64,000 bases of DNA. It comes from Octopus sinensis (Eukaryota). The notes beneath the pieces are model-generated. The model did no database searches. It had not been told where the DNA came from and saw only the letters and a list, made by a program, of their open reading frames with translations. This document shows, one piece after another, positions 24,851 through 60,782 of the stretch (positions within the stretch are counted from its first letter, which is position 1; each line of letters starts with the position of its first letter). The stretch spans positions 26,412,001-26,476,000 of the forward strand of contig NC_043002.1 of assembly GCF_006345805.1 (NCBI RefSeq), read 5' to 3'. Both the position numbers and the translations under genes were made by a program.

Positions 24851-24873
24851 TGTTATCATTATTATTACTATTA

Positions 24874-25861
24874 CGAGGGGCGTTCAATAAGTAATGCCCC
24901 TGACCCACTTCCCATAGCAGTAGAGTTGTGGACCGGAGCGTTGTCCTGCAGGAGGAGGATGTCTTTGCTGATCTTGCTCCGCCTCTTGATTTTGATAACT
25001 TCTCTTAATTTCCTGAAAAGTGAAGCATAATAGGCTCCTGTAATTGCGGTACCCTTTGCCAGGAAATCTGTCATCACTACTCCGTCCTGGTCCCAGAAGA
25101 CTGTGAGCATGACCTTGCCAGCGGAGGGCTGCACCCTTGCCTTCTTTGGAGGGGGTGAGTCACGGTGCTTCCACTGCATTGACTGGGCTTTGGTCTCTGG
25201 ATCATCGTGATGGACCCAGGTTTCATCCTGTGTAATCAGTCTTTTGAAAAATTTTGACCCATCTTCTTGGCACATCTCCAAATTCACCCTCGAGCACTCG
25301 ACGCGTTCTTGCTTCTGGAAAGGCGTGAGCAACCTGGGAATCCATCTGGCAGACACCTTTTGCATATGCAAATGGTCATGAATGATAGTTTCCACAGACC
25401 CGGTACTAATCTTGACCTCATGGGCTATTTGGCGAATAATTATGCGTCGATCTTCCAAAATGGCAGCCTCAACTTGACGGACAGATGCCTCATCAATGGC
25501 GCGAAGGGGCGACCAGATCTGGGAGCTGTTTCCACAGAGTTCCGACCATGTTTGAATTCACGATGCCAGCGTTTTACAAGGTCATATGATGGGGCATCAT
25601 CACCATAAGTTACTTTCATTTCATCAAAAGTCTCCCGTGGTGTGCGTCCTTTTTAATACAAAAACCGGATCACTGCTCGACACTCAACAGGCTCCATTTC
25701 ACACTTGACTCAGTTCAAACACCTGTAAATCAGAAACCACAATTAATTCAGAGCTGTAATTTGTATGTTGTATAGAGATATAAATGATTGCACATGCAAA
25801 ATTTCAGCTAGATCCAACAACTGCAAGTGGGTCAGAGGCATTACTTATTGAACGTCCCTCG
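24874..25861 (-). mobile_element. mariner transposon, 3'-deleted, TA target duplication
   Basis: ~37-bp TIRs (CGAGGGGCGTTCAATAAGTAATGCCCCTGACCCACTT). MEPVECRAVIRF...WIPRLLT...TQDETW...LLQDNAPVH, then a jump to the TIR, so the third catalytic D is missing. Confidence 0.95.
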
Positions 25862-26983
25862 TATTATTGTTATTATTACTATTGTTGTTGTTGTTGTGGT
25901 TATTGCCCTGTTATAGAGACCAGCTTCTTGCGGGATGTGAATTTTTGACAGTGAACTAATTTATTATGCGATGTTTTTATAAAAGTTAAGAAAACTTACT
26001 TGCTTTTATAAATTCACAGACATTTGTTTTCAGATGAAACGATGTCTATCAGGAATTCCCTTGACAGTCTTAACAAAAGCTAAGACACAATAGGAATGAC
26101 AAAATTTAAAGCCCAAGAGAAATAACAATGCTCTTACGGAAGTACTTAAAAGGATACAAAAACAATAATAAAGCAAAAAAAAAAAAGCAAAAGAAAAATA
26201 AATTCACTGAAGAAATACGATTTAATACAATTTCGAAATATCAAAAAACTGTCAGACTACGAGGGTCGGCAGAAACGTTCATAGGCTGACCAATATACTC
26301 CCATTTTAAGCGCAATCTCTTATATTAACCTAAAATATCTTTCTTTCTCTCCCACACATTCATACGTATACACACATCCACGTACACACGCACACACTCA
26401 CACACACATAGACACACACATCCACACAGTCACTCATACACACATATACACATACGCACACACACACAGACATACGCACAAACACATAGACAAATACACA
26501 TAGAGGAATGTGTATGTCCTAGTAGCAAGGCACTTAATTTCATTTTGTATCTCTTATCTTTTACTTCTTTCAGTCATTAAACTGTTGCAATGCTGGGGCA
26601 CCGCCGTGGAGAATTTTGGTCGAATGAATCCACCCCAGTACTCCTTTTTAAAGCCTACTACTTATTATATCATTCTCTATTGCAGGACTGCTAAGTTACG
26701 GCGACGTAAACCCACCAACACTGATTGTCCAGCGTAGTTGGAGACATACACATACACACATATACGCACACATTCATACACAGACGCAAACACACACACA
26801 TACACACACGCACGCACATGCATCTACGACGGGCTTCTTTCAATTTCAGTCAACTGAACCAACTCACAAGGCTTTGGTCAGCTCGAGGCAATAGTGGAGG
26901 ACATTTGCTAGAAGTGTCACTCAGTGAGACTGAACCTGAAATCATGTGGTTGGGAGAAAAACTTCTTATCACACAGGAACCCC

Positions 26984-28368: not shown

Positions 28369-29467
28369 TACATATCCATACACAGTATCTATGCATATAC
28401 ATACAACACAGTGGCACACATATCTATATGTTGATGTAGTATGAAACTATTTATCCGAAATTTGATAGTCGAAAAATGTTTCTATTGTCTTCGTTGTGTG
28501 CAGATAGTCTTCAGTGAAATTGGTTTTAGGCTTTTAAACATGAAATTATTATTAAATGATGTAATTAGATCATATGAAAATACTTCTTATGTTAATATAT
28601 TATCTTATTCTACAAAAAAAAAACATCTTTTTCAAATCGCATTTCCCACAAAAGAAATATACCACTTTCCTTTCTACGCGATCATTTTAGCAAAGACTAT
28701 GACTGCGATTTCAAATAGAAGCAAATACATCACTTGTTATCTATTCTCAAGCGGTCATGCAAATCGATTGTAGCACCTGAATCACATATCCACTATTAAT
28801 AGATTGAATTTTTCTGACTGTTTCAGAACATTCTACCTTACAATAACCAACTACTTATTTAATCCCGCACGCTATTATTTTTTTTACAATACTTTTCTTT
28901 CCTCCATCGAAAGGCGATAAAAATCTGTGGATCCTATACTAATTATTTTTCTCGCCCTTAATCAAGTCCCTCCTAGATCGCCTACGATCTTACATCCTCA
29001 ATGTCATGTTATCAACTCATTGCCAAAACAACTTATCAATTAGGCAGTAAGTATTTTGTAAATCTATTTCACTTTTTTGCTCGCACTCGCTCCATCTTAA
29101 TATATTGTATTGCATCCAATCCCTGCAGTGCAATGTCCTTAATCGGAACAGATCATGAATTCTGCATCAAGACTAAACGCGAACTTTAACTGTGATCCAA
29201 TAGCCTTACTTGTTTTACCATTCGATTGGCTACATTTTAGAAAGTGTATTTATCCTCGGACTTTCGTCCAAATTATGTTTGATGCATTCAAACCATGAGT
29301 ATATACTTCACCTTCCTTTTATTTTTGCCTTCCAAGCAAACTCATTTCACGCTTTTTATTATTGATGATGTTGTGTGGGTTCTAGTTGCTTGAATTTTAC
29401 TGCCTACATGCATTTGTAATTATGCACGCGTATATGTACTCTGCATGGGTCAATATTATATGCATTT

Positions 29468-29690
29468 AAAGGCGGTGAGCTGGCAGAATCGGTAGAATGG
29501 TGGGCGAAATGCTTAGCAGTATTTCGTCTGTCATTACGTTCAAACTCTGCCGAGATCGACTTTGCCTTTCATCCTTTCGGGGTCGATAAATTAAGTACCA
29601 GTTGCGTACTGGGGTCGATCTAACCGACTGGTGCTCTCCCCCCACCCAAAATGTCGGGCCTTGTGCCTAAAGTAGAAGAGAATATTGTAT
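29468..29690 (+). mobile_element. tRNA-derived SINE (GGCGGTGAGCTGGCAGAA family)
   Basis: Same family as 47030-47445; shared core GACTTTGCCTTTCATCCTTTCGGGGTCGATAAATTAAGTACCAG. Confidence 0.85.
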
Positions 29691-29758
29691 GAATTTAGTG
29701 TATTTGTTATTATTATGTATGTATACATACATACATATATATATGTATATATATATAT

Positions 29759-32700
29759 ATTAACAATTAAGGAACGGCCATAATAGGCCATTCACCCACT
29801 AGAAATAACAGCCAAAGCTTCTACCGCAAATAAAGATTAATTCCGTAAACAGGAGAAAATTAAAAAAACATTTACCCTGTAATTCTTGTACGGTATACCG
29901 TTTCATCCGCTGTTTAATGGTAAACTAACCTGATTAAATTAAATCAAGCCAATCTTCCATAAGCCCTCGGATTCTTCAGCAAGAAATAGCTCAAGTCGGA
30001 ACAGATATTTACACGAGGCATACCCTATCTTGCCAAGTCAATATCTGACCTAAAATTTTCAAATCGTCGCACTCGCGCCAAATTTATCGGCAGCAAATAA
30101 ATATCAGCCGTCGATTCCATTACGGAATTAACCAAAAAATTCATAATTAATCAATATAGGGTGGCAAGGAAAATTTTGTAGAATTTTTTGCCACCAGCGG
30201 CCCAGTGGGAAAAAATTAAATAGTCATAGACCATTTTTAAGTCAACATTAACAATTAAGGAACGGCCATAATAGGCATTCACCCATAGAAATAACAGCAA
30301 AGCTTCTACCTCACCGCAAATAAAGATTAATTCCGTAAACAGAGAAAATTAAAAAAACATTTACCCTGTAATTCTTGTACGGTATACCGTTTCATCCGCT
30401 GTTTAATGGTAAACTAACCTGATTAAATTAAATCACGCCAATCTTCCATAAGCCCTCGGATTCTTCAGCAAGAAATAGCTCAAGTCGGAACAGATATTTA
30501 CACGAGCATACCCTATCTGCCAGTCAATATCTGACCTAAAATTTTCAAATCGTCGCACTCGCGCCAAATTTATCGGCAGCAAATAAATATCAGCCGTCGA
30601 TTCCATTACGGAATTACCAAAAAATTCATAATTAATCAATATAGGGTGCAAGGAAAATTTTGTAGAATTTTATTGCCACCACGGCCCAGGGGGAAAAAAT
30701 TAAATAGTCATAGACATTTTTAAGTCAACATTCAATTAAGGAACGGCCAATATAGGCCATTCACCCACTAAAATAACAGCCAAAGCTTCTACCGCAAATA
30801 GATTAATTCCGTAACAGGAGAAAATTAAAAAAACATTTACCCTGTAATTTCTTGTACGTATACCGTTTCATCCGCTGTTTAATGGTAAACTAACCTGATT
30901 AAATTAAATCAAGCCAATCTTCCATAAGCCCTCGGATTCTTCAGCAAGAAATAGCTCAAGTCGGAACAGATATTTACACGAGCATACCCTATCTTGCCAA
31001 GTCATATCTGACCTAAAATTTTCAAATCGTCGCACTCGCGCCAAATTTACGGCAGCAAATAAATATCAGCCGTCGATTCCATTACGGAATAACCAAAAAA
31101 TTCATAATTAATCAATATAGGGTGGCAAGGAAAATTTTGTAGAATTTTATTGCCACCAGCGGCCCAGTGGAAAAAATTAAATAGTCATAGACCATTTTTA
31201 AGTTCAACATTAACAATTAAGGAACGGCCATAATAGGCCATTCACCCCTAGAAATAACAGCCAAAGTTCTATCTACCGCAAATAAAGATTAATTCCGTAA
31301 ACAGGAGAAAATTAAAAAAACTTTACCCTGTAATTTCTTGTACGTATACCGTTTCACCGTTTTCATCCGCTGTTTAATGGTAAACTAACCTGATTAAATT
31401 AAATCAAGCCAATCTTCCATAAGCCCTCGGATTCTTCAGCAAGAAATAGCTCAAGTCGGAACAGATATTACACGAGGCATACCCATCCTCTTGCCAAGTC
31501 AATATCTGACCTAAAATTTTCAAATCGTCGCACTCGCGCCAAATTTATCGGCAGCAATAAATATCAGCCGTCGATTCCTTACGGAATTAACCAAAAAATT
31601 CATAATTAATCAATATAGGGTGGCAAGGAAAATTTTGTAGAATTTTATTGCCACCAGCGGCCCAGTGGGAAAAAATTAAATAGTCATAGACCATTTTTAG
31701 TTCAACATTAACAATTAAGGAACGGCCATAATAGGCCATTCACCCACTAGAAATAACAGCCAAAGCTTCTACCGCAAATAAGATTAATTCCGTAAACAGG
31801 AGAAAATTAAAAAAACATTTACCCTGTAATTTCTTGTACGGTATACCTACCGTTCACGCTGTTTAATGGTAAACTAACCTGATTAAATTAAATCAAGCCA
31901 ATCTTCCATAAGCCCTCGGATTCTTCAGCAAGAAATAGCTCAAGTCGGAACAGATATTTACACGAGGCATACCCTATCTTGCCAAGTCATATCTGACCTA
32001 AAATTTTCAAATCGTCGCACTCGCGCCAATTTATCGGCAGCAAATAAATATCAGCCGTCGATTCCATTACGGATTAACCAAAATTATCATAATTAATCAT
32101 ATGGGTGGCAAGGAAAATTTTGTAGAATTTTATTGCCACCAGCGGCCCAGTGGGAAAAAATTAAATAGTCATAGACCATTTTTAAGTTCAACATTAACAA
32201 TTAAGGAACGGCCATAATAGGCCATTCACCCACTAGAAATAACAGCCCAGCTTCTACCGCAATAAAGATTAATTCCGTAAACAGGAGAAAATTAAAAAAA
32301 CATTTACCCTGTAATTTCTTGTACGGTATACCGTTTCATCCGCTGTTTAATGGTAAACTAACCTGATTAAATTAATCAAAGCCCAATCTTCCATAAGCCC
32401 TCGGATTCTTCAGCAGAAATAGCTCAAGTCGGAACAGATATTTACACGAGGCATACCCTATCTTGCCAAGTCAATATCTGACCTAAAATTTTCAAATCGT
32501 CGCACTCGCGCCAAATTTATCGGCAGCAAATAAATATCAGCCGTCGATTCCATTACGGAATTAACCAAAAAATCATAATTAATCAATATGGGGGCAAGGA
32601 AAATTTTGTAGAATTTTATTGCCACCAGCGGCCCAGTGGGAAAAAATTAAATAGTCATAGACCATTTTTAAGTTCAACATTAACAATTAAGGAACGGCCA

Positions 32701-35498
32701 TAATAGGCCATTCACCCACTAGAAATAACAGCCAAAGCTTCTACCGCAAATAAAGATTAATTCCGTAAACAGGAGAAAATTAAAAAAACATTTACCCTGT
32801 AATTTCTTGTACGGTATACCGTTTCATCCGCTGTTTAATGGTAAACTAACCTGATTAAATTAAATCAAGCCAATCTTCCATAAGCCCTCGATTCTTCAGC
32901 AAGAAATAGCTCAAGTCGGAACAGATATTTACACGAGGCATACCCTATCTTGCCAAGTCAATATCTGACCTAAAATTTTCAAATCGTCGCACTCGCGCCA
33001 AATTTATCGGCAGCAAATAAATATCAGCCGTCGATTCCATTACGGAATTAACCAAAAAATTCATAATTAATCAATATAGGGTGGCAAGGAAAATTTTGTA
33101 GAATTTTATTGCCACCAGCGGCCCAGTGGGAAAAAATTAAATAGTCATAGACCATTTTTAAGTTCAACATTAACAATTAAGGAACGGCCATAATAGGCCA
33201 TTCACCCACTAGAAATAACAGCCAAAGCTTCTACCGCAAATAAAGATTAATTCCGTAAACAGGAGAAAATTAAAAAAACATTTACCCTGTAATTTCTTGT
33301 ACGGTATACCGTTTCATCCGCTGTTTAATGGTAAACTAACCTGATTAAATTAAATCAAGCCAATCTTCCATAAGCCCTCGGATTCTTCAGCAAGAAATAG
33401 CTCAAGTCGGAACAGATATTTACACGAGGCATACCCTATCTTGCCAAGTCAATATCTGACCTAAAATTTTCAAATCGTCGCACTCGCGCCAAATTTATCG
33501 GCAGCAATAAATATCAGCCGTCGATTCCATTACGGAATTAACCAAAAAATTCATAATTAATCAATATAGGGTGGCAAGGAAAATTTTGTAGAATTTTATT
33601 GCCACCAGCGCCCAGTGGGAAAAAATTAAATAGTCATAGACCATTTTTAAGTTCAACATTAACAATTAAGGAACGGCCATAATAGGCCATTCACCCACTA
33701 GAAATAACAGCCAAAGCTTCTACTACGCAAATAAAGATTAATTCCGTAAACAGGAGAAAATTAAAAAAACATTTACCCTGTAATTTCTTGTACGGTATAC
33801 CGTTTCATCCGCTGTTTAATGGTAAACTAACATGATTAAATTAAATCAAGCCAATCTTCCATAAGCCCTCGGATTCTTCAGCAAGAATAGCTCAAGTCGG
33901 AACAGATATTTACACGAGGCATACCCTATCTTGCCAAGTCAATATCTGACCTAAAATTTTCAAATCGTCGCACTCGCGCCAAATTTATCGGCAGCAAATA
34001 AATATCAGCCGTCGATTCCATTACGGAATTAACCAAAAAATTCATAATTAATCAATATAGGGTGGCAAGGAAAATTTTGTAGAATTTTATTGCCACCAGC
34101 GGCCCAGTGGGAAAAAATTAAATAGTCATAGACCATTTTTAAGTTCAACATTAACAATTAAGGAACGGCCATAATAGGCCATTCACCCACTAGAAATAAC
34201 AGCCAAAGCTTCTACCGCAAATAAAGATTAATTCCGTAAACAGGAGAAAATTAAAAAAACATTTACCCTGTAATTTCTTGTACGGTATACCGTTTCATCC
34301 GCTGTTAATGGTAAACTAACCTGATTAATTAAATCAGCAAGCCAATCTTCCATAAGCCCTCGGATTCTTCAGCAAGAAATAGCTCAAGTCGGAACAGATA
34401 TTTACACGAGGCATACCCTATCTTGCCAAGTCAATATCTGACCTAAAATTTTCAAATCGTCGCACTCGCGCCAAATTTATCGGCAGCAAATAAATATCAG
34501 CCGTCGATTCCATTACGGAATTAACCAAAAAATTCATAATTAATCAATATAGGGTGGCAAGGAAAATTTTGTAGAATTTTATTGCCACCAGCGGCCCAGT
34601 GGGAAAAAATTAAATAGTCATAGACCATTTTTAAGTTCAACATTAAATTAAGGAACGGCCATAATAGGCCATTCACCCACTAGAAATAACAGCCAAAGCT
34701 TCTACCGCAAATAAAGATTAATTCCGTAAACAGGAGAAAATTAAAAAAAACATTTACCCTGTAATTTCTTGTACGGTATACCGTTTCATCCGCTGTTTAA
34801 TGGTAAACTAACCTGATTAAATTAAATCAAGCCAATCTTCCATAAGCCCTCGGATTTTTCAGCAAGAAATAGCTCAAGTCGGAACAGATATTTACACGAG
34901 GCATACCCTATCTTGCCAAGTCAATATCTGACCTAAAATTTTCAAATCGTCGCACTCGCGCCAAATTTATCGGCAGCAAATAAATATCAGCCGTCGATTC
35001 CATTACGGAATTAACCAAAAAATTCATAATTAATCAATATAGGGTGGCAAGGAAAATTTTGTAGATTTTATTGCCACCAGCGGCCCAGTGGGAAAAAATT
35101 AAATAGTCATAGACCATTTTTAAGTTCAACATTAACAATTAAGGAACGGCCATATAGGCCATTCACCCACTAGAAATAACAGCCAAAGCTTCTACCGCAA
35201 TAAAGATTAATTCCGTAAACAGGAGAAAATTAAAAAAACATTTACCCTGTAATTTCTTGTACGGTATACCCGTTTTCATCCGCTGTTTAATGGTAAACTA
35301 ACCTGATTAAATTAAATCAAGCCAATCTTCCATAAGCCCTCGGATTCTTCAGCAAGAAATAGCTCAAGTCGGAACAGATATTTACACGAGGCATACCCTA
35401 TCTTGCCAAGTCAATATCTGACCTAAAATTTTCAAATCGTCGCACTCGCGCCAAATTTATCGGCAGCAAATAAATATCAGCCGTCGATTCCATTACGG
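29759..35498 (-). repeat. Left arm of ~490-bp tandem array, ~11.7 units; ribozyme-sense strand is minus
   Basis: Marker GGAACGGCCA recurs at 29771, 30259, 30740, 31221, 31719, 32205, 32691, 33181, 33670, 34162, 34652 and 35143 (period 490 in the cleanest copies). Copies differ almost only by 1-nt indels. Confidence 0.98.
33292..33398 (-). ncRNA. Type I hammerhead ribozyme, representative copy in left arm (12 copies, some with indels)
   Basis: Reverse complement of the 37388-37494 motif. Confidence 0.9.
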
Positions 35499-38400
35499 TA
35501 TACCGTACAAGAAATACCGTATACAAGAAATTACGGGGTAAATGTTTTTTTAATTTTCTCCTGTTTACGGAATTAATCTTTATTTGCGTAGAAGCTTTGG
35601 CTGTTATTTCTAGTGGGTGAATGGCCTATTATGGCCGTTTCCTTATTTTAATGTGAACTAAAAATGGTCTATGACTATTTAATTTTTTCCCACTGGGCCG
35701 CTGGTGGCAATAAAATTCTACAAAATTTTCCTTGCCACCCTATATTGATTAATTATGAATTTTTTGGTTAATTCCGTAATGGAATCGACGGCTGATATTT
35801 ATTTGCTGCCGATAAATTTGGCGCGAGTGCGACGATTTGAAAATTTAGTCAGATATTGACTTGGCAAGATAGGGTATGCCTGCGTGTAAATATCTGTTCC
35901 GACTTGAGCTATTTTTGCTGAAGAATCCGAGGGCTTATGGAAGATTGGCTTGATTTAATTTAATCAGGTTATTTACCATTAACAGCGGATGAAACGGTAT
36001 ACCGTACAAGAAATTACAGGGTAAATGTTTTTTTAATTTTCTCCTGTTTACGGAATTAATCTTTATTGGCGGTAGAAGCTTTGGCTGTTATTTCTAGTGG
36101 GTGAATGGCCTATTATGGCCGTTCCTTAATTGTTAATGTTGAACTTAAAAATGGTCTATGACTATTTAATTTTTTCCCACTGGGCCGCTGGTGGCAATAA
36201 AATTCTACAAAATTTTCCTTGCCACCCTATATGATTAATTATGAATTTTTTGGTTAATTCCGTAATGGAATCGACGGCTGATATTTATTTGCTGCCGATA
36301 AATTTGGCGCGAGTGCGACGATTTGAAAATTTTAGGTCAGATATTGACTTGGCAAGATAGGGTATGCCTCGTGTAAATATCTGTTCCGACTTGAGCTATT
36401 TCTTGCTGAAGAATCCGAGGGCTTATGGAAGATTGGCTTGATTTAATTTAATCAGGTTAGTTACCATAAACAGCGGATGAAACGGTATACCGTACAAGAA
36501 ATTACAGGGTAAATGTTTTTTTAATTTTCTCCTGTTTACGGAATTAATCTTATTTGCGGTAGAAGCTTGGCTGTTATTTCTAGTGGGTGAATGGCCTATT
36601 ATGGCCGTTCCTTAATTGTTAATGTTGAACTAAAAATGGTCTATGACTATTTAATTTTTTCCCACTGGGCCGCTGGTGGCAATAAAATTCTACAAAATTT
36701 TCCTTGCCACCCTATATTGATAATTATGAATTTTTTGGTTAATTCCGTAATGGAATCGACGGCTGATATTTATTTGCTGCCGATAAATTTGGCGCGAGTG
36801 CGACGATTTGAAAATTTTAGGTCAGATATTGACTTGGCAAGATAGGGTATGCCTCGTGTAAATATCTGTTCCGACTTGAGCTATTTCTTGCTGAAGAATC
36901 CGAGGGCTTATGGAAGATTGGCTTGATTTAATTTAATCAGGTTAGTTTACCATTAAACAGCGGATGAAACGGTATACCGTACAAGAAATACCGTACAAAA
37001 ATTACGGGGTAAAGTTTTTTTAATTTTCTCCTGTTTACGGAATTAATCTTTATTTGCGGTAGAAGCTTTGGCTGTTATTTCTAGTGGGTGAATGGCCTAT
37101 TATGGCCGTTCCTTAATTGTTAATGTTGAACTTAAAAATGGTCTATGACTATTTAATTTTTTCCCACTGGGCCGCTGGTGGCAATAAAATTCTACAAAAT
37201 TTTCCTTGCCACCCTATATTGATTAATTATGAATTTTTTGGTTAATCCGTAATGGAATCGACGGCTGATATTTATTTGCTGCCGATAAATAAATTGGCGC
37301 GAGTGCGGACGATTTGAAAATTTTAGGTCAGATATTGACTTGGCAGATAGGGTATGCCTCGTGTAAATATCTGTTCCGACTTGAGCTATTTCTTGCTGAA
37401 GAATCCGAGGGCTTATGGAAGATTGGCTTGATTTAATTTAATCAGGTTAGTTTACCATTAAACAGCGGATGAAACGGTATACCGTACAAGAAATTACAGG
37501 GTAAATGTTTTTTTAATTTTCTCCTGTTTACGGAATTAATCTTTATTTGCGTAGAAGCTTTGGCTGTTATTTCTAGTGGGTGAATGGCCTATTATGGCCG
37601 TTCCTTAATTGTTAATGTTGAACTTAAAAATGGTCTATGACTATTTAATTTTTTCCCACTGGGCCGCTGGTGGCAATAAAATTCTACAAAATTTTCCTTG
37701 CCACCCTATATTGATTAATTATGAATTTTTTGGTTAATTCCGTAATGGAATCGACGGCTGATTTATTTGCTGCCGATAATTTGGCGCGAGTGCGACGATT
37801 TGAAAATTTTAGGTCAGATATTGACTTGGCAAGATAGGGTATGCCTCGTGTAAATATCTGTTCCGACTTGAGCTATTTCTTGCTGAAGAATCCGAGGCTT
37901 ATGGAAGATTGGCTTGATTTAATTTAATCAGGTTAGTTTACCATTAAACAGCGGATGAACGGTATACCGTACAAGAATTACAGGGTAAATGTTTTTTTAA
38001 TTTTCTCCTGTTTACGGAATTAATCTTATTTGCGGTAGAAGCTTTGGCTGTTATTTCTAGTGGGTGAATGGCCTATTATGGCCGTTCCTTAATTGTTAAT
38101 GTTGAACTTAAAAATGGTCTATGACTATTTAATTTTTTCCCACTGGCCGCTGGTGGCAATAAAATTCTACAAAATTTTCCTTGCCACCCTATATTGATAA
38201 TTATGAATTTTTTGGTTAATTCCGTAATGGAATCGACGGCTGATATTATTTGCTGCCGATAAATTTGGCGCGAGTGCGACGATTTGAAAATTTTAGGTCA
38301 GATATTGACTTGGCAAGATAGGGTATGCTCGTGTAAATATCTGTTCCGACTTGAGCTATTTCTTGTCTGAAGAATCCGAGGGCTTATGGAATTGGCTTGA

Positions 38401-39173
38401 TTTAATTTAATCAGGTTAGTTTACCATTAAACAGCGGATGAAACGGTATACCGTACAAGAAATTACAGGGTAAATGTTTTTTTAATTTTCTCCTGTTTAC
38501 GGAATTAATCTTTATTTGCGGTAGAAGCTTTGGCTGTTATTTCTAGTGGGTGAATGGCCTATTATGGCCGTTCCTTAATTGTTAATGTTGAACTTAAAAA
38601 TGGTCTATGACTATTTAATTTTTTCCCACTGGGCCGCTGGTGGCAATAAAATTCTACAAAATTTTCCTTACCCTATATTGATTAATATGAATTTTTTGGT
38701 TAATTCCGTAATGGAATCGACGGCTGATATTTATTTGCTGCCGATAAATTTGGCGCGAGTGCGACGATTTGAAAATTTTAGGTCAGATATTGACTTGGCA
38801 AGATAGGGTATGCCTCGTGTAAATATCTGTTCCGACTTGAGCTATTTCTTGCTGAAGAATCCGAGGGCTTATGGAAGATTGGCTTGATTTAATTTAATCA
38901 GGTTAGTTTACCATTAAACAGCGGATGAAACGGTAACCGTACAAGAAATAAACAGGGTAAATGTTTTTTTAATTTTCTCCTGTTTACGGAATTAATCTTT
39001 ATTTGCGGTAGAAGCTTTGGCTGTTATTTCTAGTGGGTGAATGGCCTATTATGGCCGTTCCTAATTGTTAATGTTGAACTTAAAAATGGTCTATGACTAT
39101 TTAATTTTTTCCCACTGGGCCGCTGGTGGCAATAAAATTCTACAAAATTTTCCTTGCCCCCTATTTGATTAAT

Positions 39174-39178
<5 letters not shown>
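35495..39178 (+). repeat. Right arm of the same array, inverted, ~7.5 units; ribozyme-sense strand is plus
   Basis: The reverse-complement marker (TGGCCGTT) recurs 8 times, near 35632, 36116, 36602, 37103, 37595, 38079, 38565 and 39052. The arm ends in (TA)n at ~39180. Confidence 0.98.
37388..37494 (+). ncRNA. Type I hammerhead ribozyme, representative copy in right arm (7 full-length copies in this arm, some with indels)
   Basis: Stem I ATTTCTTG (37388-95)/CAAGAAAT (37487-94); core CTGAAGA (37396-402); stem II ATCCG (37403-07)/CGGAT (37466-70); GAAA (37471-74); stem III A-CGGTATACCG-T; predicted cleavage after GTA at 37486. Confidence 0.9.
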
Positions 39179-39206
<28 letters not shown>

Positions 39207-39622
39207 TTCTCTTTTATTTTTTCGTTTTTATTCTCTTTATTTGTTTCAGTCATTTGACTGCGGCATTGCTGGAGCACCGCCTTTAGTCGAGTGAATCTAC
39301 CCCAGGACTTATTCTTTATAAGCGTAGTACTTATCCAATCGGTTCATTTGCCGAACCGCTAAGTTACGGGGATGTAAACACACCAGCATCGGTTGTCAAG
39401 CGATGTTGGGCAGGGGGGGGATCAATCACAAACACATAAACAAAAACACACACACTCACACACATTCATATATATATGACGGTCTTCTTTCAGTTTCCCT
39501 CTACCAAATCTGCTCACAAGGCTTTGATCGTCCCGAGGCTATAGTAGAAAACACTTTCTCAAGTTGCCATATATATACATATAGTACAGGTATATCAAGT
39601 ATCATATAAAGTAAATTCTCAG

Positions 39623-46615: not shown

Positions 46616-47029
46616 CAACACCATTGAAGAAGGTCATTAAGACTTTAAGATCAGGAACATTTTGCTAGATTTGACTAGTGGCGACCGACCTGTATGTATG
46701 TGTGTGTGTTTGGGCGTGTGTCCCCATGTGCTTTTGAAAAGGGTCTGGGAGAGATGTGCAAAGGTGGTGACAGATGATAAATTATACCAGAGAAAAAATC
46801 ATATACTCCACTCCGACGAGGAGAAATAAACAGATGACATACACACAGAATGTGTGTATGTATTTTCAAGCATTGCGTGACATAAAACGACTCATATAGA
46901 TATACACACACAAGCGTAGCTGTGTGGTAAGAAGTTTGCTCCCCAATCGCATGGTTTCAAGTTAAGTGCTATCCTCAGGCCGAATAAAGCCTTCTGAGTG
47001 CATTTGGCAGACGTAAACTGTGTATATGA

Positions 47030-47445
47030 AGGCGGCGAGCTGGCAGAAACGTTAGCACGCCGGGCGAAATGCTTAGCGGTATTTCGGCTGCCGTTACGTT
47101 GTGAGTTCAAATTCCGCCGAGGTCGACTTTGCCTTTCATCCTTTCGGGCTCGATAAATTAAGTACCAGTTACGCACTGGGGTCGATGTAATCGACTTAAT
47201 ACCATGTCTGTGGTTGTTTGTCCCCTCTATGTTTAGCCCCTTGTGGGTAATAAAGAAATAGGTATTTCGTCTGCCGTTATGTTCTGAGTTCAAGTTCCGC
47301 CGAGGTCGACTTTGCCTTTCATCGTTTCGGTGGTCGATAAACTAAGTACCAGTTACGCACTGGGGTCGATGTAATCGACTTAGTCCCTTTGTATGTTTTT
47401 GTTTGTCCCCTCTATGTTTAGCTCCTTGTGGGCAACAAAGAAATG
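47030..47445 (+). mobile_element. SINE plus tandem 5'-truncated second copy
   Basis: Full copy ~47030-47260; the repeat restarts at GGTATTTCG (47261). Confidence 0.88.
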
Positions 47446-48400: not shown

Positions 48401-48665
48401 CTTTTCTTTATTTCTGGTCTAACAGCAGAGATGAAAACTAGTTCCTCTTTAAATCTACTAACTTTGAGGGCATTGTTACATAGATAGGGGGCAACATTAT
48501 CAAATATGTTTATATTGGAGGAGAGGCCAGAAATTCTACTAATATTATTAACTCAATTCTTAAACGCTATGGTCGGTGGTGGCAGGAACCTACATTAATA
48601 TAACTAAGTCTATCGCTGGGCTTTCTATAGGGTTTGTAAATATTCTCTTGGAAATCAACCGATAC

Positions 48666-48715
<50 letters not shown>

Positions 48716-48803
48716 TTATATATATATACACTTCTTTAACTCCCAAGAAAGAATATATATATTTTCAAAAATCAAAAGGAAAACAAACAAAAGAAAAACA
48801 AAC

Positions 48804-50033
48804 ATGACTAACTTGCAGGCCTGCAACAGACGAAATTGGTCTGATAACGAAATTGATGTTTTAATAAACACTTGGTTCTCTCTTTCCCAAACAGAAAATC
48901 TAAATGTTTTGTGTTTGAATGAGATTGCCGAAAAAACATCACAAGTGGTCAACACACGATCCGTCAAACAGATTCGTAGCAAGCTGAAACATATCGAAGA
49001 ATCTTTCAAACTGACAAAAGGCCATTATGAAAAGCTTCTTCATATTTTCACAGTTCAAGAACATCAACAGCTAGAAAACCAGCAGCCACAACAACAACAA
49101 CAACAGAATGAGCCACTCCTGGCTCCCAGCACAATGGCTGACCCTAACATGGGTCAAGCACAACAACAACAACAACAGCCACAGCAACAAGAACAACAAC
49201 AGCCACTCCTCAACTCTAGCTTACTAGATGATTCACTAAATGCCAGTATCTTTTCACCGCTCTCACGGCAACCACCACAATTATCATCATCATCATCACC
49301 ACCGCTGCCACCATCGTCTTCTATCACCAAAAATACCAACAAAAAACCAAATAAGAAACCACTGCCCTCTTCCTCCACATCACCACCTCAATACTACTGC
49401 AGTAACAAAAACTTAAAGAAACATAGGAAGCAGAATGCGCCCCCCACGGCACAAACAAGAAATCCCAAAATATGCCGCTATTCTCTGCGCCAGAGACTCT
49501 GCACAAATAGTGACTGCATCTTCACGCATCTACCCGGCACTAGACGCACTACCGGCCAAGGCCAAAGCACGCATCCCACAATAACATCAACACCACCAAA
49601 TAGTAAATCGAAATTCAAAACACACACAACTCGGAGTCCCAAAATCTGCCGGTATTCCCAACGTGAGAGAACATGTCTGCTGAGTGACTGTCCCTTCACT
49701 CATCTTCCAGGGACCCGACGCACAAACAGAAACGGGGCTTCAAGCCAACACACAAACCTGAATAAAAATAAGAATATAAACACACCATGCTGCAGTAATG
49801 CTGGTCCAGTCTTTTCAGGAAGACACAAAAACAACAACAACAAAAGTGGAAACTACAACCCTATCCAACAGTACAACCACACCTCCAGCCAAAAACTGCT
49901 CCCTAAGCAGGAAAATTCTTTTTTAGCCATGTTGAACATGGCAAAAGAGATACACAAAAACATTCTAGCCATCACTCAACACCATCCTATGCTATTACCC
50001 CAGTGCACCAATTCCCCACATTGCTGCCACTAA
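48804..50033 (+). CDS. LINE ORF1, 409 aa: Myb/SANT-like N-terminus, poly-Q/Pro-Ser linker, two CCCH zinc fingers
   Basis: First ATG after the (TA)n is at 48804 (MTNLQ...). W-x3-E-x3-LI-x2-W...EIAEK...RSVKQIRSKLK resembles a trihelix/Myb-SANT domain. CRYSLRQRLCTNSDCIFTH (49473-49529) and CRYSQRERTCLLSDCPFTH (49647-49703) are C-x8-C-x4-C-x3-H. Confidence 0.8.
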   Translation: MTNLQACNRRNWSDNEIDVLINTWFSLSQTENLNVLCLNEIAEKTSQVVNTRSVKQIRSKLKHIEESFKLTKGHYEKLLHIFTVQEHQQLENQQPQQQQQQNEPLLAPSTMADPNMGQAQQQQQQPQQQEQQQPLLNSSLLDDSLNASIFSPLSRQPPQLSSSSSPPLPPSSSITKNTNKKPNKKPLPSSSTSPPQYYCSNKNLKKHRKQNAPPTAQTRNPKICRYSLRQRLCTNSDCIFTHLPGTRRTTGQGQSTHPTITSTPPNSKSKFKTHTTRSPKICRYSQRERTCLLSDCPFTHLPGTRRTNRNGASSQHTNLNKNKNINTPCCSNAGPVFSGRHKNNNNKSGNYNPIQQYNHTSSQKLLPKQENSFLAMLNMAKEIHKNILAITQHHPMLLPQCTNSPHCCH

Positions 50034-51082
50034 CACACACAAAAAATCCAAGCCCCCTGCAACAGTCAAAACCAGCCACTACACTAACCTCCACATTCCT
50101 ATTCAATGCACAAGGTGTCAGCCCTTCCATCAATGCACAAAAATGGAAGGTCCAATTCATTGAAGACTGGGTTGGTAACCATTCACACCACATCCCTTTC
50201 TTCATTCTCACTGAGACCCACCTTGACAACTCCCACTTGGAAGCCGAAGTGAGAGTGAAGAATTTCACAACCATCCGCGCGGATCGTATCGGCAGGAGGA
50301 AGGGTGGAACTGCCATTTTCCTGCATGATTCATTTACGGCAGATGGAAATAGTATATTCTCCAACGGCTACTGTGAATCAGTCACCGTGCACAACAAAGC
50401 CAATGACCTGACAGTAATTGGGCTCTATAGGCCGCCCCAAACACCCATACTGTGCTTTAAAGAATGCCTCAACAGCATTAAGTGCTTTATTCAACAGTGC
50501 CATTCGAGCAACATACTCATGATGGGAGACTTCAATCTACCCTGTGTTGACTGGACTACAAACTGTTTGAAACCAAGCACTCCCGCCTCAACCGCTGACA
50601 AAGAAGCAGCAGAGTCACTTTTCGACTTTACGAATGAGTTTTTCTTGTCCCAACTTGTCCTTGCACCAACAAGACATGAGAACATTTTGGACCTAGTGTT
50701 TAGTAACCGCACTAACACTATACATAACGTTACAGTGGAAAAAACCCTTCTTTCAGACCATGACATGGTTCTCTGTAACATGAAATTCCACCAGCCGAAA
50801 GCTAATCCTAGTGACCTCCCTCCAGCCCACCCATTTGACAACATGGATCTCCATAATGCCAACTGGGATGCAATCAGGAACGAGCTATCACATGTGGACT
50901 GGTCCTTTACACATACACACATCTCCACCAACCATAAAACATATTGGCAGATCTTTGTAGACACCGTAACAGACATATGTGCAAAACACTCCCCACCAAG
51001 ACCTGTGAACAAAAAGTGCAGAATCCCCCAAAACAGAAAAAAACATTATCAGAAAAATAAAAAGAACAAACAAAAAAATTAA
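49907..51082 (+). CDS. LINE ORF2 part 1: apurinic-like endonuclease
   Basis: Motifs FNAQG, LTETHL, GGTAIF, YRPP, GDFNLP, ILDLVF, SDHDMV. The frame is open from 49907, with no ATG before the endonuclease domain. Confidence 0.92.
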   Translation, partial: AGKFFFSHVEHGKRDTQKHSSHHSTPSYAITPVHQFPTLLPLTHTKNPSPLQQSKPATTLTSTFLFNAQGVSPSINAQKWKVQFIEDWVGNHSHHIPFFILTETHLDNSHLEAEVRVKNFTTIRADRIGRRKGGTAIFLHDSFTADGNSIFSNGYCESVTVHNKANDLTVIGLYRPPQTPILCFKECLNSIKCFIQQCHSSNILMMGDFNLPCVDWTTNCLKPSTPASTADKEAAESLFDFTNEFFLSQLVLAPTRHENILDLVFSNRTNTIHNVTVEKTLLSDHDMVLCNMKFHQPKANPSDLPPAHPFDNMDLHNANWDAIRNELSHVDWSFTHTHISTNHKTYWQIFVDTVTDICAKHSPPRPVNKKCRIPQNRKKHYQKNKKNKQKN

Positions 51083-53036
51083 CAAACTAAAGTACTGCCA
51101 ACAGCAACACACACATTCGACGGCTATCGCACTGCTTGAATCCAAAAAATATAACCTCCAACAATGCATGAAGACCCTCATCAATAACCAAAGATCAGCT
51201 GAGGAGAAGTGGGCCATTGAAAAAATCAAACTCAACCCCAAAGTGTTCTTTTCATTTGCGAGGAAACGCAGGGTCACTGTCCCCACTGTTGGCCCTCTAA
51301 TTGACGAAACTGGCACTCTCCAAGATAATGCCAAATCCATGGCCGAGATACTGCAGAAACAATACTGCTCTGTTTTCAGCAATCCTGATATGGCCGATCT
51401 GGGCTGTATCAGTGATGTCAACCCCCAACACACTATATCGGACATAACGTTTAGTGCCCCTGATGTCTTAGCGGCGATAAACGAAATAAAACACAATTCA
51501 GCAGTAGACCCCGATAGGTTCCCTGCTTGTGTCCTGAAGGTGTGTCGACACCAACTTGCATCTCCCCTTGCTAATCTGTGGAGAAACTCACTGGATGCTG
51601 GCTATATTCCAAAAAACCTTCTGTCCCAGTCTGTTGTCCCAGTTTTCAAAAAGGGAAACAAGTCCCTTGCAGTGAACTACCGTCCGATCTCACTCACCTC
51701 TCATATCATCAAGGTATTTGAGAGGGTGGTGAGATCTCGAATAACCCAATTTCTGGAAAACAACAGACGGCTGATCTCCAACCAACATGGGTTCCGTAAT
51801 GGAAGGGACTGCCTAACGCAGCTCCTGCATCACTTTGATGACATTTTGAGAGCTTTGGGAGAGGGCTCCAACACCGATGTCATCTACCTTGATTTCAGTA
51901 AGGCCTTCGACAGGGTCGATCACAAGATCCTATTGAAAAAACTATCCAACATTGGTGTCTCTGGAAAGTTACTGAAATGGATCAAGTGTTTCCTGACAGA
52001 CAGATCTTAACATGTTGTAGTTGAAGGGGTAAAATCAAGCCCAGCCAAAGTCAGTAGTGGCGTTCCGCAAGGCACTGTGCTGGGTCCACTTCTTTTCATC
52101 ATTTACATTAATGACATTAATGACATTATCAAGCACAGCAACATAAACATTTTTGCAGATGATTCCAAGCTACAGAAGGTCATAAATGAGGCGAGTGACC
52201 GGACATGCCTTCAGTCAGATCTACTGGCTGTTATCCAATGGGCAGAAAAAAACAATATGCTGCTGAACGAAGATAAATTTGAGTTAATCCACTTTGGAAA
52301 AGAGGATGCCCTGAAACTCCCATACTCCCTTCCTTCAGGTGAAACTCTCGCAGCGTCCAACAACATCAGAGACTTGGAGTAATTGTGGACAACAACATAA
52401 GCTGGGCCACTCATATAAACACCAAAGTTGACATGGCCCGCAGAATGTGTTCCTGGATTCTCAGAACTTTCCAGTCGAGAGATATCCACACCATTATCCT
52501 TCTCTTCTCCACTTTTGTCCGACCCCACTTGAATACTGTTGTCCACTGTGGTCTCCCCACACAATACAAGGTATCATAAAAGTTGAAGCACCTCAAAGGG
52601 CAATCACAAAAAGATAGATGGCATGACAGGCCTCGACTATTGGGGTCGACTAGTAAAGCTAAAACTTTATTCTCTCCAACGTCGTCGTGAGCGCTACATC
52701 ATCTGCATGATGTGGAAAATATTCCATCAGCATTGCCCAAATGATGTTGGCATCACCTTCAGGGTACATCCAAGGCTTGGGCCCCGTGCCATCCGCCCAA
52801 AACAAAAATCGCACTCTCATCTCATAACAACAATACGGCACAATTATTTCACCTCAATTGGCCCCGCTCTCTTTAACATTACACCAAAACACATTAAAAC
52901 AGAAACTGACCCTATAGGGTTCAAGAAGTCTTTGGACAGATTCCTTCAAGAAATCCCGGATAAACCCCCTACACCCGGATATGTCTCTGTAAACAATAAC
53001 TCTCTACTTGAGTGGGCCATAGTGCCCAAATTCTGA
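51083..53036 (+). pseudogene. LINE ORF2 part 2: reverse transcriptase and C-terminus, disrupted
   Basis: Motifs NYRPISLTS, QHGFR, YLDFSKAFDRV, GVPQGTVLGP, IFADDSKL. One in-frame stop at ~52008 and frameshifts near 51045, 52377, 52528 and 52612, mostly in short homopolymers. Confidence 0.92.
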
Positions 53037-60367: not shown

Positions 60368-60782
60368 CGTAGGTGTGGATGTGTGGTAAGTAGCTTGCTT
60401 ACGAACTACATGGTTCCGGGTTCAGTCCCACTGCGGGGCACCTTGCGTAAGTGTCTTCTACTATAGCCTCGGGCCGACGAAAGGCTTGTGAGTGGATTTG
60501 GTAAACGGAAACTAAAAGAAGCCCGTTGTATATATGTATATATGTATGTGTGTGTATATGTTTGTGTGTCTGTGTTCGTCCCCTCAACATCGCTTGACAA
60601 CAGATGCTGGTGTGTTTACGTCCCCGTAAATTAGCGGTTCGGCAAAAGAGAACGATAGAATAATTACAAGGCTTACAAAGAATAAGTCCTGAGGTCGATT
60701 TGCTCGACTAAAGTCGGTGCTCCAGCATGGCCACAGTCAAATGACTGAAACAAATAAAAGAGTAAAAAGAGTAAAGAGTAAT
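60368..60782 (+). mobile_element. Composite SINE with internal (TG/TA)n and tandem 3' tail
   Basis: tRNA-like head (TGTGGTAAG...GGTTCAGTCCC), central microsatellite, (AAAGAGTA)-like tail. Partial copies at ~3155-3330, 10220-10400, 11590-11735, 26545-26945, 39225-39560, 53480-53830 and 58920-59060. Confidence 0.8.

What the first reader, a model, noticed from the sequence alone, without database searches (positions are those of the whole stretch)
29759..39178. The 490-bp 'satellite' is an array of hammerhead-ribozyme units: candidate octopus-type non-LTR retrozyme / circular RNA system
Seen: each unit contains, on one strand only, all parts of a type I hammerhead in correct order and pairing (example 37388-37494). 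These are an 8-bp stem I, CUGAAGA, a 5-bp stem II (A-U rather than the usual G-C at 10.1-11.1) closing a 58-nt structured insert, GAAA, a self-complementary stem III (ACGGUAUACCGU) and a GUA cleavage triplet; 19 full-length motifs in total. Known: hammerhead-bearing tandem repeats occur in newts (satellite 2), schistosomes (Sm-alpha) and Dolichopoda crickets (pDo500). Animal non-LTR retrozymes are transcribed as multimers that self-cleave to monomers and circularise. Palindromic stem III is typical of dimeric hammerheads. Inference: transcription through either arm should give 490-nt monomers and circles that a retroelement RT can copy back into tandem DNA. I know of no description of this family in cephalopods but cannot search.
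Basis: partly seen in the sequence, partly recalled or inferred. Interest (0 to 1): 0.93.

Follow-up and report, generated by a model that had tools for sequence, protein, structure and literature searches.

The report
Hammerhead-ribozyme tandem repeat (retrozyme) array
A 9.4-kb block of nineteen ~490-bp repeats, each carrying a complete self-cleaving "hammerhead" RNA motif, is a new example of a known class of animal mobile repeats (non-LTR retrozymes), laid down here as two head-to-head arms inside a TA microsatellite.

Summary
Positions 29759-39178 hold two mutually inverted tandem arrays of a ~490-bp unit (11.7 and 7.5 copies). Each of the 19 units carries a full type I hammerhead on one strand only: 8-bp helix I, CUGAAGA, 5-bp helix II closing a 58-nt extension, GAAA, palindromic helix III, GUA cleavage triplet. 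A generic three-helix descriptor finds it only in the array, and never in shuffled sequence. Rfam Hammerhead_1 aligns end to end but scores 21-22 bits, below its 34-bit threshold. The long helix II insert is the visible cause, and an A-U pair at 10.1/11.1 may add to it.

This fits metazoan non-LTR retrozymes, already described in corals, mussels and amphibians. It is a new member of a known kind, probably in an octopod genome.

The insertion architecture is new here. The arms meet 5'-to-5' at a 4-nt microhomology. Both 3' ends abut a split (TA)n microsatellite, and the unit phases are neither mirrored nor contiguous. That pattern matches Penelope-like-element integration and suggests two target-primed reverse transcriptions of multimeric or circular sense RNA.

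Self-cleavage, circular RNA and mobility remain untested. No relatives could be retrieved, so there is no covariation evidence.

The parts
29714..29758 (.). Left half of the split, imperfect (TA)n microsatellite that flanks the array.
   Evidence: TRF rows at 29714-29760; sequence.
29759..35498 (-). Left arm: 11.7 units of the ~490-bp repeat, with the hammerhead-sense strand on the minus strand. In sense numbering it runs from unit position 255 (at the junction) to position 131 (at the outer edge). It holds 12 hammerhead copies. The last base 5' of the predicted cut is at 35260, 34772, 34281, 33791, 33300, 32810, 32322, 31837, 31341, 30855, 30378 and 29889.
   Evidence: Exact-pattern copies are at 29889-29979, 30378-30468, 32322-32413, 33300-33390, 33791-33881 and 34281-34372.
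35495..35522 (.). Head-to-head junction. ACGG (35495-35498) is shared by both arms as a 4-nt microhomology. It is followed by TATACCGTA|CAAGAAAT and a 15-nt repeat of the cleavage-site sequence (35508-35522).
   Evidence: Sequence; splitting; unit phases.
35499..39178 (+). Right arm: 7.5 units, with the hammerhead-sense strand on the plus strand. In sense numbering it runs from unit position 479 to position 237. It holds 7 hammerhead copies, with predicted cuts after 36006, 36494, 36981, 37486, 37971, 38455 and 38941.
   Evidence: Exact-pattern copies are at 35918-36006, 36406-36494, 36891-36981, 37396-37486 and 38367-38455.
39174..39206 (.). Right half of the split (TA)n microsatellite.
   Evidence: TRF; sequence.
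37388..37395 (+). Example hammerhead: helix I, 5' strand (AUUUCUUG).
   Evidence: this pairing forms in the minimum-energy fold.
37396..37402 (+). Example hammerhead: core C3-A9 (CUGAAGA).
37403..37470 (+). Example hammerhead: helix II. Five proximal pairs (A10.1-U11.1, U-A, C-G, C-G, G-C) close a 58-nt extension that folds into an imperfect long hairpin. The segment's fold energy is -25.9 kcal/mol, and its 14-bp distal helix contains 5 G-U pairs.
37471..37473 (+). Example hammerhead: core G12 A13 A14.
37474..37485 (+). Example hammerhead: helix III, the 12-nt palindrome ACGGUAUACCGU. It forms a 4-bp hairpin with a UAUA loop that includes A15.1-U16.1 (-2.9 kcal/mol), or a 12-bp intermolecular duplex (-18.8 kcal/mol).
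37486..37486 (+). Example hammerhead: A17 of the GUA triplet. The predicted cut lies between 37486 and 37487.
37487..37494 (+). Example hammerhead: helix I, 3' strand (CAAGAAAU). This is the 5' end of the predicted monomer RNA.
36982..36995 (+). 14-nt duplication (ACCGTA|CAAAAAT) spanning the predicted cleavage/ligation site. It occurs together with an A12G change, and both are also seen at the junction unit.

Best explanation
This is a genomic array of a non-LTR retrozyme: a non-coding ~490-nt repeat whose sense RNA carries a type I hammerhead ribozyme.

The proposed working is as follows. Only the sequence anatomy is shown; the rest is inferred from the published retrozyme model.
1. Read-through or own-promoter transcription of the sense strand gives multimeric RNA.
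2. The hammerhead folds, either transiently in cis or as a double hammerhead through its palindromic helix III. [quoted passage not shown]
3. A host tRNA-type ligase closes the monomers into circles.
4. A reverse transcriptase supplied in trans copies circular or multimeric RNA into multimeric cDNA.

The locus itself looks like one integration event of the Penelope-like-element (PLE) type. A break in a (TA)n microsatellite supplied two primers. Each annealed to an AU-rich stretch of sense RNA (…UUGUUAAU and …GAUUAAUUAU), and each was extended for several unit lengths. The two cDNAs were then joined 5'-to-5' at a 4-nt microhomology, giving two head-to-head arms. Later unequal exchange may have changed the copy numbers.
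For: - Complete hammerhead core and three helices in every unit, on one strand only. A generic descriptor finds it nowhere else in the window and never in shuffles.
- Rfam Hammerhead_1 is the only ribozyme family that aligns, over its full length.
- The isolated motif's minimum-energy fold is the canonical junction.
- Unit features match published retrozyme features: tandem, 36% G+C, no ORF above 42 aa, monomer RNA far more stable than shuffles with z = -4.7 to -6.3 (PMC7229834, PMC7761336).
- Copies differ by only 0.64% substitutions plus indel noise, so the array is young or homogenised.
- Anatomy: the sense 5' ends meet at the centre at microhomology ACGG. Both sense 3' ends abut (TA)n at AU-rich positions that are followed by G in the consensus. 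The unit phases are 255->131 and 479->237.
- (TA)n covers only 5% of the rest of the window.
- Tandem/inverted insertions with an inverted 5'-truncated copy at the 5' end, and a bias towards microsatellite targets, (TA)n in the Naiad clade, are described hallmarks of PLEs (PMC8557442).
- PLEs are the proposed mobilisers or ancestors of animal retrozymes (PMC7761336; bioRxiv 10.64898/2026.07.22.740005).
- Young Penelope families exist in Octopus vulgaris (PMC13282606).
- The flanks are host interspersed repeats with paralogues elsewhere in the window, so the array is embedded in host DNA.
Against: - Rfam score is 21-22 bits against a gathering threshold of 34.
- A10.1-U11.1 replaces the highly conserved G10.1-C11.1, whose N7 belongs to a metal site (PMC4209133, PMC7151607).
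- A 58-nt helix II extension is atypical, and loop-loop tertiary contacts cannot be recognised.
- At thermodynamic equilibrium helix I is outcompeted once 150 nt or more of upstream sequence are included (pair probability 0-0.4).
- The copies are too alike for covariation. No related locus, transcript or species could be retrieved.
- The unit (490 nt) is slightly above the published 150-450 bp range.
- No PLE lies in the window.
- The PLE-type reading rests on one locus.
- (TA)n is self-complementary, so other rearrangements with a breakpoint inside it would be partly invisible.
Confidence: 0.7

Rival explanations
1. This is a hammerhead-bearing satellite amplified at the DNA level. A short hammerhead-containing piece, for example a PLE terminal repeat or one retrozyme dimer, landed here once. 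It grew into the two arrays by unequal crossing-over or replication slippage, with no repeated RNA-circle retrotransposition.
For: The units are nearly identical, with substitutions at 0.64%, as expected from homogenisation. A satellite birth-and-expansion model is discussed for these elements (bioRxiv 10.64898/2026.07.22.740005). The two variant units carrying the 14-nt duplication and A12G lie 3 units apart, which shows the right arm is not a copy of a single circle.
Against: DNA-level growth does not by itself explain three features: two oppositely oriented arms with independent phases, both 3' ends at (TA)n, and a microhomology join. It is compatible with the main explanation as a later step.
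Confidence: 0.2
2. This is a relic. The repeat descends from a retrozyme, but the hammerhead no longer cleaves because of A-U at 10.1/11.1, the long helix II insert and competing folds. The array now behaves as ordinary satellite DNA.
For: The score is below the Rfam threshold. The 10.1/11.1 pair is non-canonical. Helix I is disfavoured in long-context folding. Eight of 19 copies carry changes in or near the motif.
Against: All 11 invariant core bases (C3, U4, G5, A6, G8, A9, G12-A14, A15.1, U16.1) and H17 are intact in the consensus. Compensated changes at 10.1/11.1 occur in cricket hammerheads (PMC2837043). Most copy differences look like long-read indel noise. The array is young.
Confidence: 0.15
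3. The hammerhead-like motif is a chance match in an ordinary satellite.
For: Rfam gathering search finds nothing. No covariation evidence is available.
Against: The generic descriptor gives 0 hits in 200 shuffles of 54.6 kb on both strands and 0 in 5000 shuffled monomers. Hammerhead_1 aligns over its full model length. The minimum-energy fold equals the canonical junction.
Confidence: 0.03
4. The inverted arrangement is an assembly artefact (a fold-back or chimeric long read), and the true locus is one direct array.
For: Indel-dominated noise (1.4% indels against 0.64% substitutions) suggests a weakly polished long-read assembly in this repeat.
Against: The arms are not mirrored at the junction (phases 255 versus 479). 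Their lengths differ (5.7 and 3.7 kb). Each ends in a different unique flank and at a different phase.
Confidence: 0.05

Closest known systems
Metazoan non-LTR retrozymes (Cervera & de la Peña 2020, PMC7229834; review PMC7761336), e.g. the Mytilus galloprovincialis 350-390-bp repeats
   Same: Type I hammerhead in each unit of a short, AT-rich, non-coding tandem repeat. No LTR, PBS or PPT. The monomer RNA is predicted to be stably folded. The archetypal loop 1-loop 2 contacts are not recognisable, as in the mussel. Helix III is stable enough for monomeric action, as stated for most invertebrate copies.
   Different: The unit is longer (490 nt, against 170-400 nt RNAs and 150-450 bp repeats). 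Helix II carries a 58-nt extension. The 10.1/11.1 pair is A-U. The host is probably an octopod. Expression and circularity are unknown here.
Classical hammerhead satellites: newt satellite 2, Schistosoma Sm-alpha, Dolichopoda pDo500 (PMC2837043)
   Same: Tandem satellite with a type I hammerhead on one strand. The unit length is close to pDo500 (~500 bp). Helix III has a palindromic element that would allow double-hammerhead pairing.
   Different: No sequence similarity could be tested. Helix III here (4 bp plus a tetraloop) is longer than the 1-2 bp of the amphibian type, which cleaves efficiently only as a dimer (PMC4209133, PMC7229834).
Penelope-like elements and their pLTR hammerheads (PMC4209133, PMC8557442)
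   Same: Head-to-head inverted 5'-truncated copies, tandem arrangement and a (TA)n microsatellite target. Hammerhead on the sense strand. A longer than usual helix II is noted for PLE min-hammerheads.
   Different: No RT/GIY-YIG ORF lies here or anywhere in the window. The hammerhead is a full three-helix motif, not the minimal variant that lacks helix III. There is no bulged base between A9 and 10.1. The 30-40-bp 'tail' was not identified.
L1 twin priming (Ostertag & Kazazian 2001; recalled from memory, not checked here)
   Same: Two target-primed reverse transcriptions from the two strands of one break, joined at microhomology, giving inverted segments.
   Different: A different retroelement class and endonuclease. 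The template here is multimeric or circular, so each arm is many units long.
Plant LTR retrozymes (PMC4918200)
   Same: Non-autonomous elements with hammerheads that yield circular RNAs.
   Different: They have type III hammerheads, LTRs, PBS and PPT, are GC-rich, and occur as dimers rather than long arrays. None of this applies here.

Membership tests
Hammerhead ribozyme, type I | Core C3 U4 G5 A6 N7 G8 A9 (definition quoted in PMC7151607) | tested here: met
   CUGAAGA at 37396-37402 and in the consensus of all units.
Hammerhead ribozyme, type I | Core G12 A13 A14, the A15.1-U16.1 pair, and H17 (not G) at the cleavage site | tested here: met
   GAA, then A...U closing helix III, then A17 (GUA) at 37471-37486.
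Hammerhead ribozyme, type I | Three helices around the core, with helix I open and helices II and III closed | tested here: met
   Helix I is 8 bp, helix II is 5 bp plus an extension, and helix III is 4 bp plus UAUA. The minimum-energy fold of the 107-nt motif is exactly this structure. Eleven copies pass the generic descriptor. Support comes from complementarity and energy only, with no covariation.
Hammerhead ribozyme, type I | G10.1-C11.1 pair (highly conserved, not part of the minimal core) | tested here: not met
   A10.1-U11.1 in all copies. Compensated changes at this pair are reported in cricket hammerheads (PMC2837043).
Hammerhead ribozyme, type I | Rfam RF00163 gathering score (34 bits). 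This is a curation threshold, not a biochemical criterion. | tested here: not met
   21.4-22 bits over model positions 1-45, and 0 hits at gathering threshold. The printed alignment shows the long helix II insertion, with low posterior probability there, and no match at the two 10.1/11.1 columns. Their share of the score loss was not measured.
Hammerhead ribozyme, type I | Loop-loop tertiary contact between helices I and II | not testable with these tools
   No recognisable loop 1. An internal loop 5 bp into helix II could play the role of loop 2, but this is speculative.
Hammerhead ribozyme, type I | Site-specific, Mg2+-dependent self-cleavage | not testable with these tools
   Needs in vitro transcription.
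Metazoan non-LTR retrozyme | Type I hammerhead in all units of a tandem repeat (definition of an 'active' element in bioRxiv 10.64898/2026.07.22.740005) | tested here: met
   19 of 19 units carry the motif. Eleven are exact and 13 pass at least one strict test.
Metazoan non-LTR retrozyme | Short unit (150-450 bp), low G+C (<45%), no LTR/PBS/PPT, non-coding | tested here: inconclusive
   G+C is 36%. The longest frame is 42 aa. No tRNA-like or PBS feature was found. The unit is 490 bp, slightly above the quoted range.
Metazoan non-LTR retrozyme | Stable, highly self-paired monomer or circular RNA | tested here: inconclusive
   The circular minimum free energy is -144.5 kcal/mol with z = -6.3. 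The paired fraction (59%) is no higher than in shuffles (63%), and the antisense strand has a similar z (-5.2).
Metazoan non-LTR retrozyme | Expressed as linear and circular monomer RNA | not testable with these tools
   No transcriptome of the host is reachable.
Metazoan non-LTR retrozyme | Many dispersed genomic copies; co-occurrence with PLEs | not testable with these tools
   There is only one locus in the window and no eukaryotic genome collection is at hand. PLEs are reported in Octopus vulgaris (PMC13282606).
PLE-type integration | Tandem copies plus an inverted 5'-truncated copy at the 5' end; microsatellite target | tested here: met
   Head-to-head arms with independent phases, and (TA)n on both sides. 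The description of PLE insertions is in PMC8557442.
PLE-type integration | Sequence similarity of the unit to a PLE terminal repeat; PLE RT/GIY-YIG nearby or in the genome | not testable with these tools
   No PLE lies in the window. The only RT there belongs to an APE-type LINE.

The most novel reading that the evidence does not exclude
The locus is a preserved footprint of a single Penelope-type, twin-primed integration of multimeric cDNA copied from a circular or multimeric hammerhead RNA. If so, it is direct structural evidence for which machinery mobilises animal retrozymes. The 2020 review says that cannot be deduced from the repeats themselves. In addition, the hammerhead, with A10.1-U11.1 and a 58-nt helix II extension, would be an active natural variant that standard Rfam annotation misses. 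Cephalopod (and other) genomes could then hold an uncounted population of such ribozymes.
Probability: 0.3. Interest if true: 0.6.

Novelty: new member of a known kind. Interest (0 to 1): 0.4.

Why it matters
Hammerhead-bearing tandem repeats are a widespread but still poorly understood class of mobile, circular-RNA-producing elements in animals.

- **New host group.** This one probably adds cephalopods to the list. In the literature I could search, only an Rfam count in the giant squid exists for them.
- **Blind spot in annotation.** A complete hammerhead can sit below Rfam's threshold because of a long helix II insert, so annotation pipelines would miss the family.
- **A testable clue to mobilisation.** Head-to-head arms with both 3' ends in a TA microsatellite point to Penelope-like elements as the mobiliser. 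This could be checked genome-wide in any species with retrozymes.

It does not open a new category of biology.

Tried and rejected
- **Rfam at gathering threshold, whole window:** no hit. In E-value mode only Hammerhead_1 appears, plus TA-repeat 'miRNA' noise. No other ribozyme class was found on either strand.
- **Search for relatives:**
  - An exact 28-mer in metagenome contigs gave 0 hits.
  - A 23-mer in viral contigs gave 0 hits.
  - A degenerate core and helix II pattern in metagenome contigs gave 19 hits. All are bacterial coding-sequence chance matches lacking helix III and helix I.
- **Reaching eukaryote assemblies through spurious ORFs of the repeat:** exact look-up of six ORFs found none in the collection. 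A full HMMER scan with the 42-aa frame returned two unrelated repetitive proteins.
- **Literature search for the motif's sequence strings:** only unrelated primers.
- **Host identity:** the LINE endonuclease ORF has Argonauta hians as its best named hit, at 48% identity. Contigs of the closer, unnamed hits come from ENA metagenome assemblies and say nothing about the organism. The host is therefore 'probably an octopod', not proven.
- **Strand asymmetry of folding:** I first read this as evidence for selection on the sense RNA (-144.5 versus -103.2 kcal/mol). It is mostly G+U composition, since the z-scores are -6.3 versus -5.2. I dropped it as an argument.
- **Simple inversion of a direct array:** rejected, because the unit phases are not contiguous (131+1 is not 479).
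- **Fold-back duplication or artefact:** rejected, because the phases are not mirrored (255 versus 479).
- **Pol III or tRNA-like origin:** no tRNA was found. The sense strand also has T7 and T6 runs that would terminate Pol III. The T-run point comes from reading the sequence and general knowledge.

Full report
**What is there**

Tandem Repeats Finder reports two adjacent arrays of one unit: 29759-35498 (period 490, 11.7 copies) and 35522-39180 (period 486, 7.5 copies). The consensus of one is the reverse complement of the other.

I cut the arrays at the predicted ribozyme cleavage site. This gives 18 full monomers of 477-496 nt plus terminal pieces, and a 491-nt consensus.

The copies differ from the consensus by 0.64% substitutions and 1.4% single-base indels, nearly all singletons. 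This looks like long-read consensus noise over an essentially homogeneous, young array. The array therefore holds no covariation information.

**The hammerhead**

- AUUUCUUG, 37388-37395
- CUGAAGA, 37396-37402
- AUCCG...CGGAU closing 58 nt, 37403-37470
- GAA, 37471-37473
- the palindrome ACGGUAUACCGU, 37474-37485
- A17, 37486
- CAAGAAAU, 37487-37494

All 11 invariant core bases (C3, U4, G5, A6, G8, A9, G12-A14, A15.1, U16.1) and H17 agree with the published core definition (PMC7151607).

The motif occurs 19 times. Seven are on the + strand in the right arm and twelve on the - strand in the left arm, so it lies on one strand of the unit only. Eleven copies match the exact pattern, against none in shuffles.

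That pattern was derived from the sequence, so I also wrote a generic type I descriptor. It finds 11 copies in the array. It finds none in the remaining 54.6 kb on either strand, none in 200 dinucleotide shuffles of that sequence, and none in 5000 shuffled monomers.

The 107-nt motif alone folds at minimum free energy into exactly the hammerhead three-way junction (-35.3 kcal/mol). The 121-nt stretch around it has z = -4.7 against shuffles, although its minimum-energy fold forms helices II and III but not helix I.

Rfam gives no hit at gathering threshold. With permissive filters the only ribozyme family is RF00163 Hammerhead_1. It aligns over the whole model (positions 1-45) at 21.4-22 bits, against a threshold of 34. 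The alignment shows where it departs from the model: the long insertion in helix II, aligned with low posterior probability, and the unmatched 10.1/11.1 columns. I did not measure how much of the score loss each of these explains.

I treat the Rfam threshold as a curation cut-off, not as a defining property, but I record it as not met.

**Departures from the canonical motif**

- **A10.1-U11.1.** This replaces the highly conserved G10.1-C11.1 (PMC4209133), whose base contributes to a metal site (PMC7151607). Compensated changes at this pair are known in cricket satellite hammerheads (PMC2837043).
- **Helix II extension.** Helix II continues into an imperfect long hairpin. The segment's fold energy is -25.9 kcal/mol, and its 14-bp distal helix has five G-U pairs.
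- **Helix III.** It has 4 bp plus a UAUA loop (-2.9 kcal/mol). Because the 12-mer is self-complementary, two copies can form a 12-bp duplex (-18.8 kcal/mol). A double hammerhead is therefore possible. Helix III is nevertheless longer than the 1-2 bp of the amphibian type, which needs dimers (PMC4209133, PMC7229834), so cleavage in cis is equally plausible.
- **Competing folds.** When 150 nt or more of upstream sequence are included, helix I is outcompeted at equilibrium. If the ribozyme acts, it does so kinetically or through alternative conformers, as is usual for viroid-like RNAs. That last comparison is inference.

**The unit as a whole**

The unit is 36% G+C. It has no frame longer than 42 aa, no tRNA-like element and no other Rfam match.

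The monomer RNA is much more stable than shuffles: z = -4.7 for the linear form and z = -6.3 for the circular form. The antisense strand has a similar z (-5.2). The 41 kcal/mol advantage of the sense strand is largely due to G+U composition, so I do not use it as evidence.

These features match the published description of metazoan non-LTR retrozymes: type I hammerheads in AT-rich, non-coding tandem repeats of 150-450 bp, expressed as 170-400-nt circular RNAs in coral, mussel and axolotl (PMC7229834, PMC7761336). The one exception is that this unit is somewhat longer.

In hammerhead-sense orientation, the left arm runs from unit position 255 at the centre to position 131 at the left edge. The right arm runs from position 479 at the centre to position 237 at the right edge.

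The arms are therefore head-to-head. Their 5' ends are joined at a 4-nt microhomology (ACGG, 35495-35498).

Both 3' ends abut a (TA)n microsatellite that the array splits in two (29714-29758 and 39174-39206). Both stop at the end of an AU-rich run, directly before a G of the consensus (…TTGTTAAT|G and …GATTAATTAT|G).

The phases exclude two simple alternatives. They are not mirrored, which rules out a fold-back duplication or a fold-back assembly artefact. They are not contiguous, which rules out a simple inversion of part of a direct array.

(TA)n occupies 5.0% of the rest of the window, so landing in it by chance is possible but not likely.

This arrangement is what is described for Penelope-like elements (PMC8557442): tandem copies, an inverted 5'-truncated copy at the 5' end, and a bias towards microsatellite targets, (TA)n in the Naiad clade. 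PLEs are the proposed partners or ancestors of animal retrozymes (PMC7761336; bioRxiv 10.64898/2026.07.22.740005).

The 2020 review notes that the repeats themselves give no clue to the mobilising element. The 2026 preprint argues from sequence similarity in Xenopus and does not discuss insertion architecture.

My inference is that both strands of one break in (TA)n primed reverse transcription on sense RNA, either multimeric or circular and copied round and round. The two cDNAs were then joined at microhomology. This is inferred from a single locus.

**Host and context**

Both flanks are interspersed repeats with paralogues elsewhere in the window, so the array is embedded in host DNA and is not a contaminant.

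The window also holds an APE-type LINE (48576-53036; Exo_endo_phos and RVT_1) and a mariner fragment. It holds no PLE.

The LINE endonuclease has as its best named relative a protein of the octopod Argonauta hians (48% identity). This is consistent with, but does not prove, an octopod origin.

In the searchable literature I found no description of a hammerhead repeat in cephalopods. The giant-squid genome paper lists 235 Rfam Hammerhead_1 loci (PMC6962438). Octopus vulgaris is reported to have young Penelope families (PMC13282606).

**What could not be done**

No eukaryotic genome or transcriptome collection is reachable. The following all failed to retrieve relatives:
- DNA pattern scans of metagenome and viral contigs
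- exact look-ups of the repeat's short ORFs
- a full HMMER scan with the longest frame
- a literature search for the motif strings

Copy number in the genome, conservation, covariation, transcription, cleavage and circularity therefore all remain open.

**Verdict**

The interpretation as a hammerhead-bearing tandem repeat of the non-LTR retrozyme kind is supported by every test available in silico. Two conserved or curated features are not met: G10.1-C11.1 and the Rfam cut-off.

It is a new member of a known kind with some variant traits. The head-to-head, (TA)n-flanked architecture is the most useful new lead.

Interest is moderate (0.4). The most novel reading is a preserved PLE-type twin-primed integration together with an active hammerhead variant that Rfam misses. 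I give that reading a probability of about 0.3.

Noticed in passing
window 36982-36995 and 35508-35522: A 14-15-nt duplication (ACCGTA|CAAGAAAT) spans exactly the predicted cleavage/ligation site. It occurs in two units of the right arm, 3 units apart, and both copies are followed by the same A12G change (TTACGGGG). Unlike the singleton indels, this is a shared, real variant. It could be polymerase or RT slippage at the palindromic helix III or ligation junction. It shows the right arm is not a copy of one single circle.
   Followed up: partly
window 29759-39178: Differences between units are dominated by single-base indels, mostly singletons (1.4% indels against 0.64% substitutions). This suggests long-read consensus errors in this repeat rather than true divergence. 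The per-copy 'broken' hammerheads may therefore be intact in reality.
   Followed up: partly
unit positions 42-55 and 246-259 (e.g. window 37528-37541 and 37732-37745): A 14-bp long-range helix (UUACGGAAUUAAUC / GGUUAAUUCCGUAA) encloses the central domain of the predicted monomer fold. The left arm's 5' truncation point (CCGTAATGG) lies inside its 3' strand.
   Followed up: no
window 6514-7270: An unrelated 259-bp tandem repeat, 2.9 copies at 98% identity. My descriptor finds no hammerhead there.
   Followed up: no
window 48576-53036 (+): A LINE with a 485-aa first ORF carrying a weak Myb/SANT-like match, an APE-type endonuclease and an RVT_1 reverse transcriptase split over several frames. 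The best named relative is from Argonauta hians (48% identity). It is not a Penelope-like element.
   Followed up: partly
window 24871-25458 (-): A mariner-type transposase fragment (Pfam Transposase_1, E = 6e-23).
   Followed up: partly
window 29461-29629 and 39225-39520: Both flanks of the array are interspersed, SINE-like repeats. Paralogues lie at 47021-47380, 60485-60768, 3181-3337 and 26560-26741 (68-90% identity).
   Followed up: partly
whole window: The window is very rich in microsatellites. It has 25 (TA)n arrays covering 5% of the sequence, plus many (CA)n, (ATCT)n and (ACAT)n arrays. Overall G+C is about 36%.
   Followed up: partly
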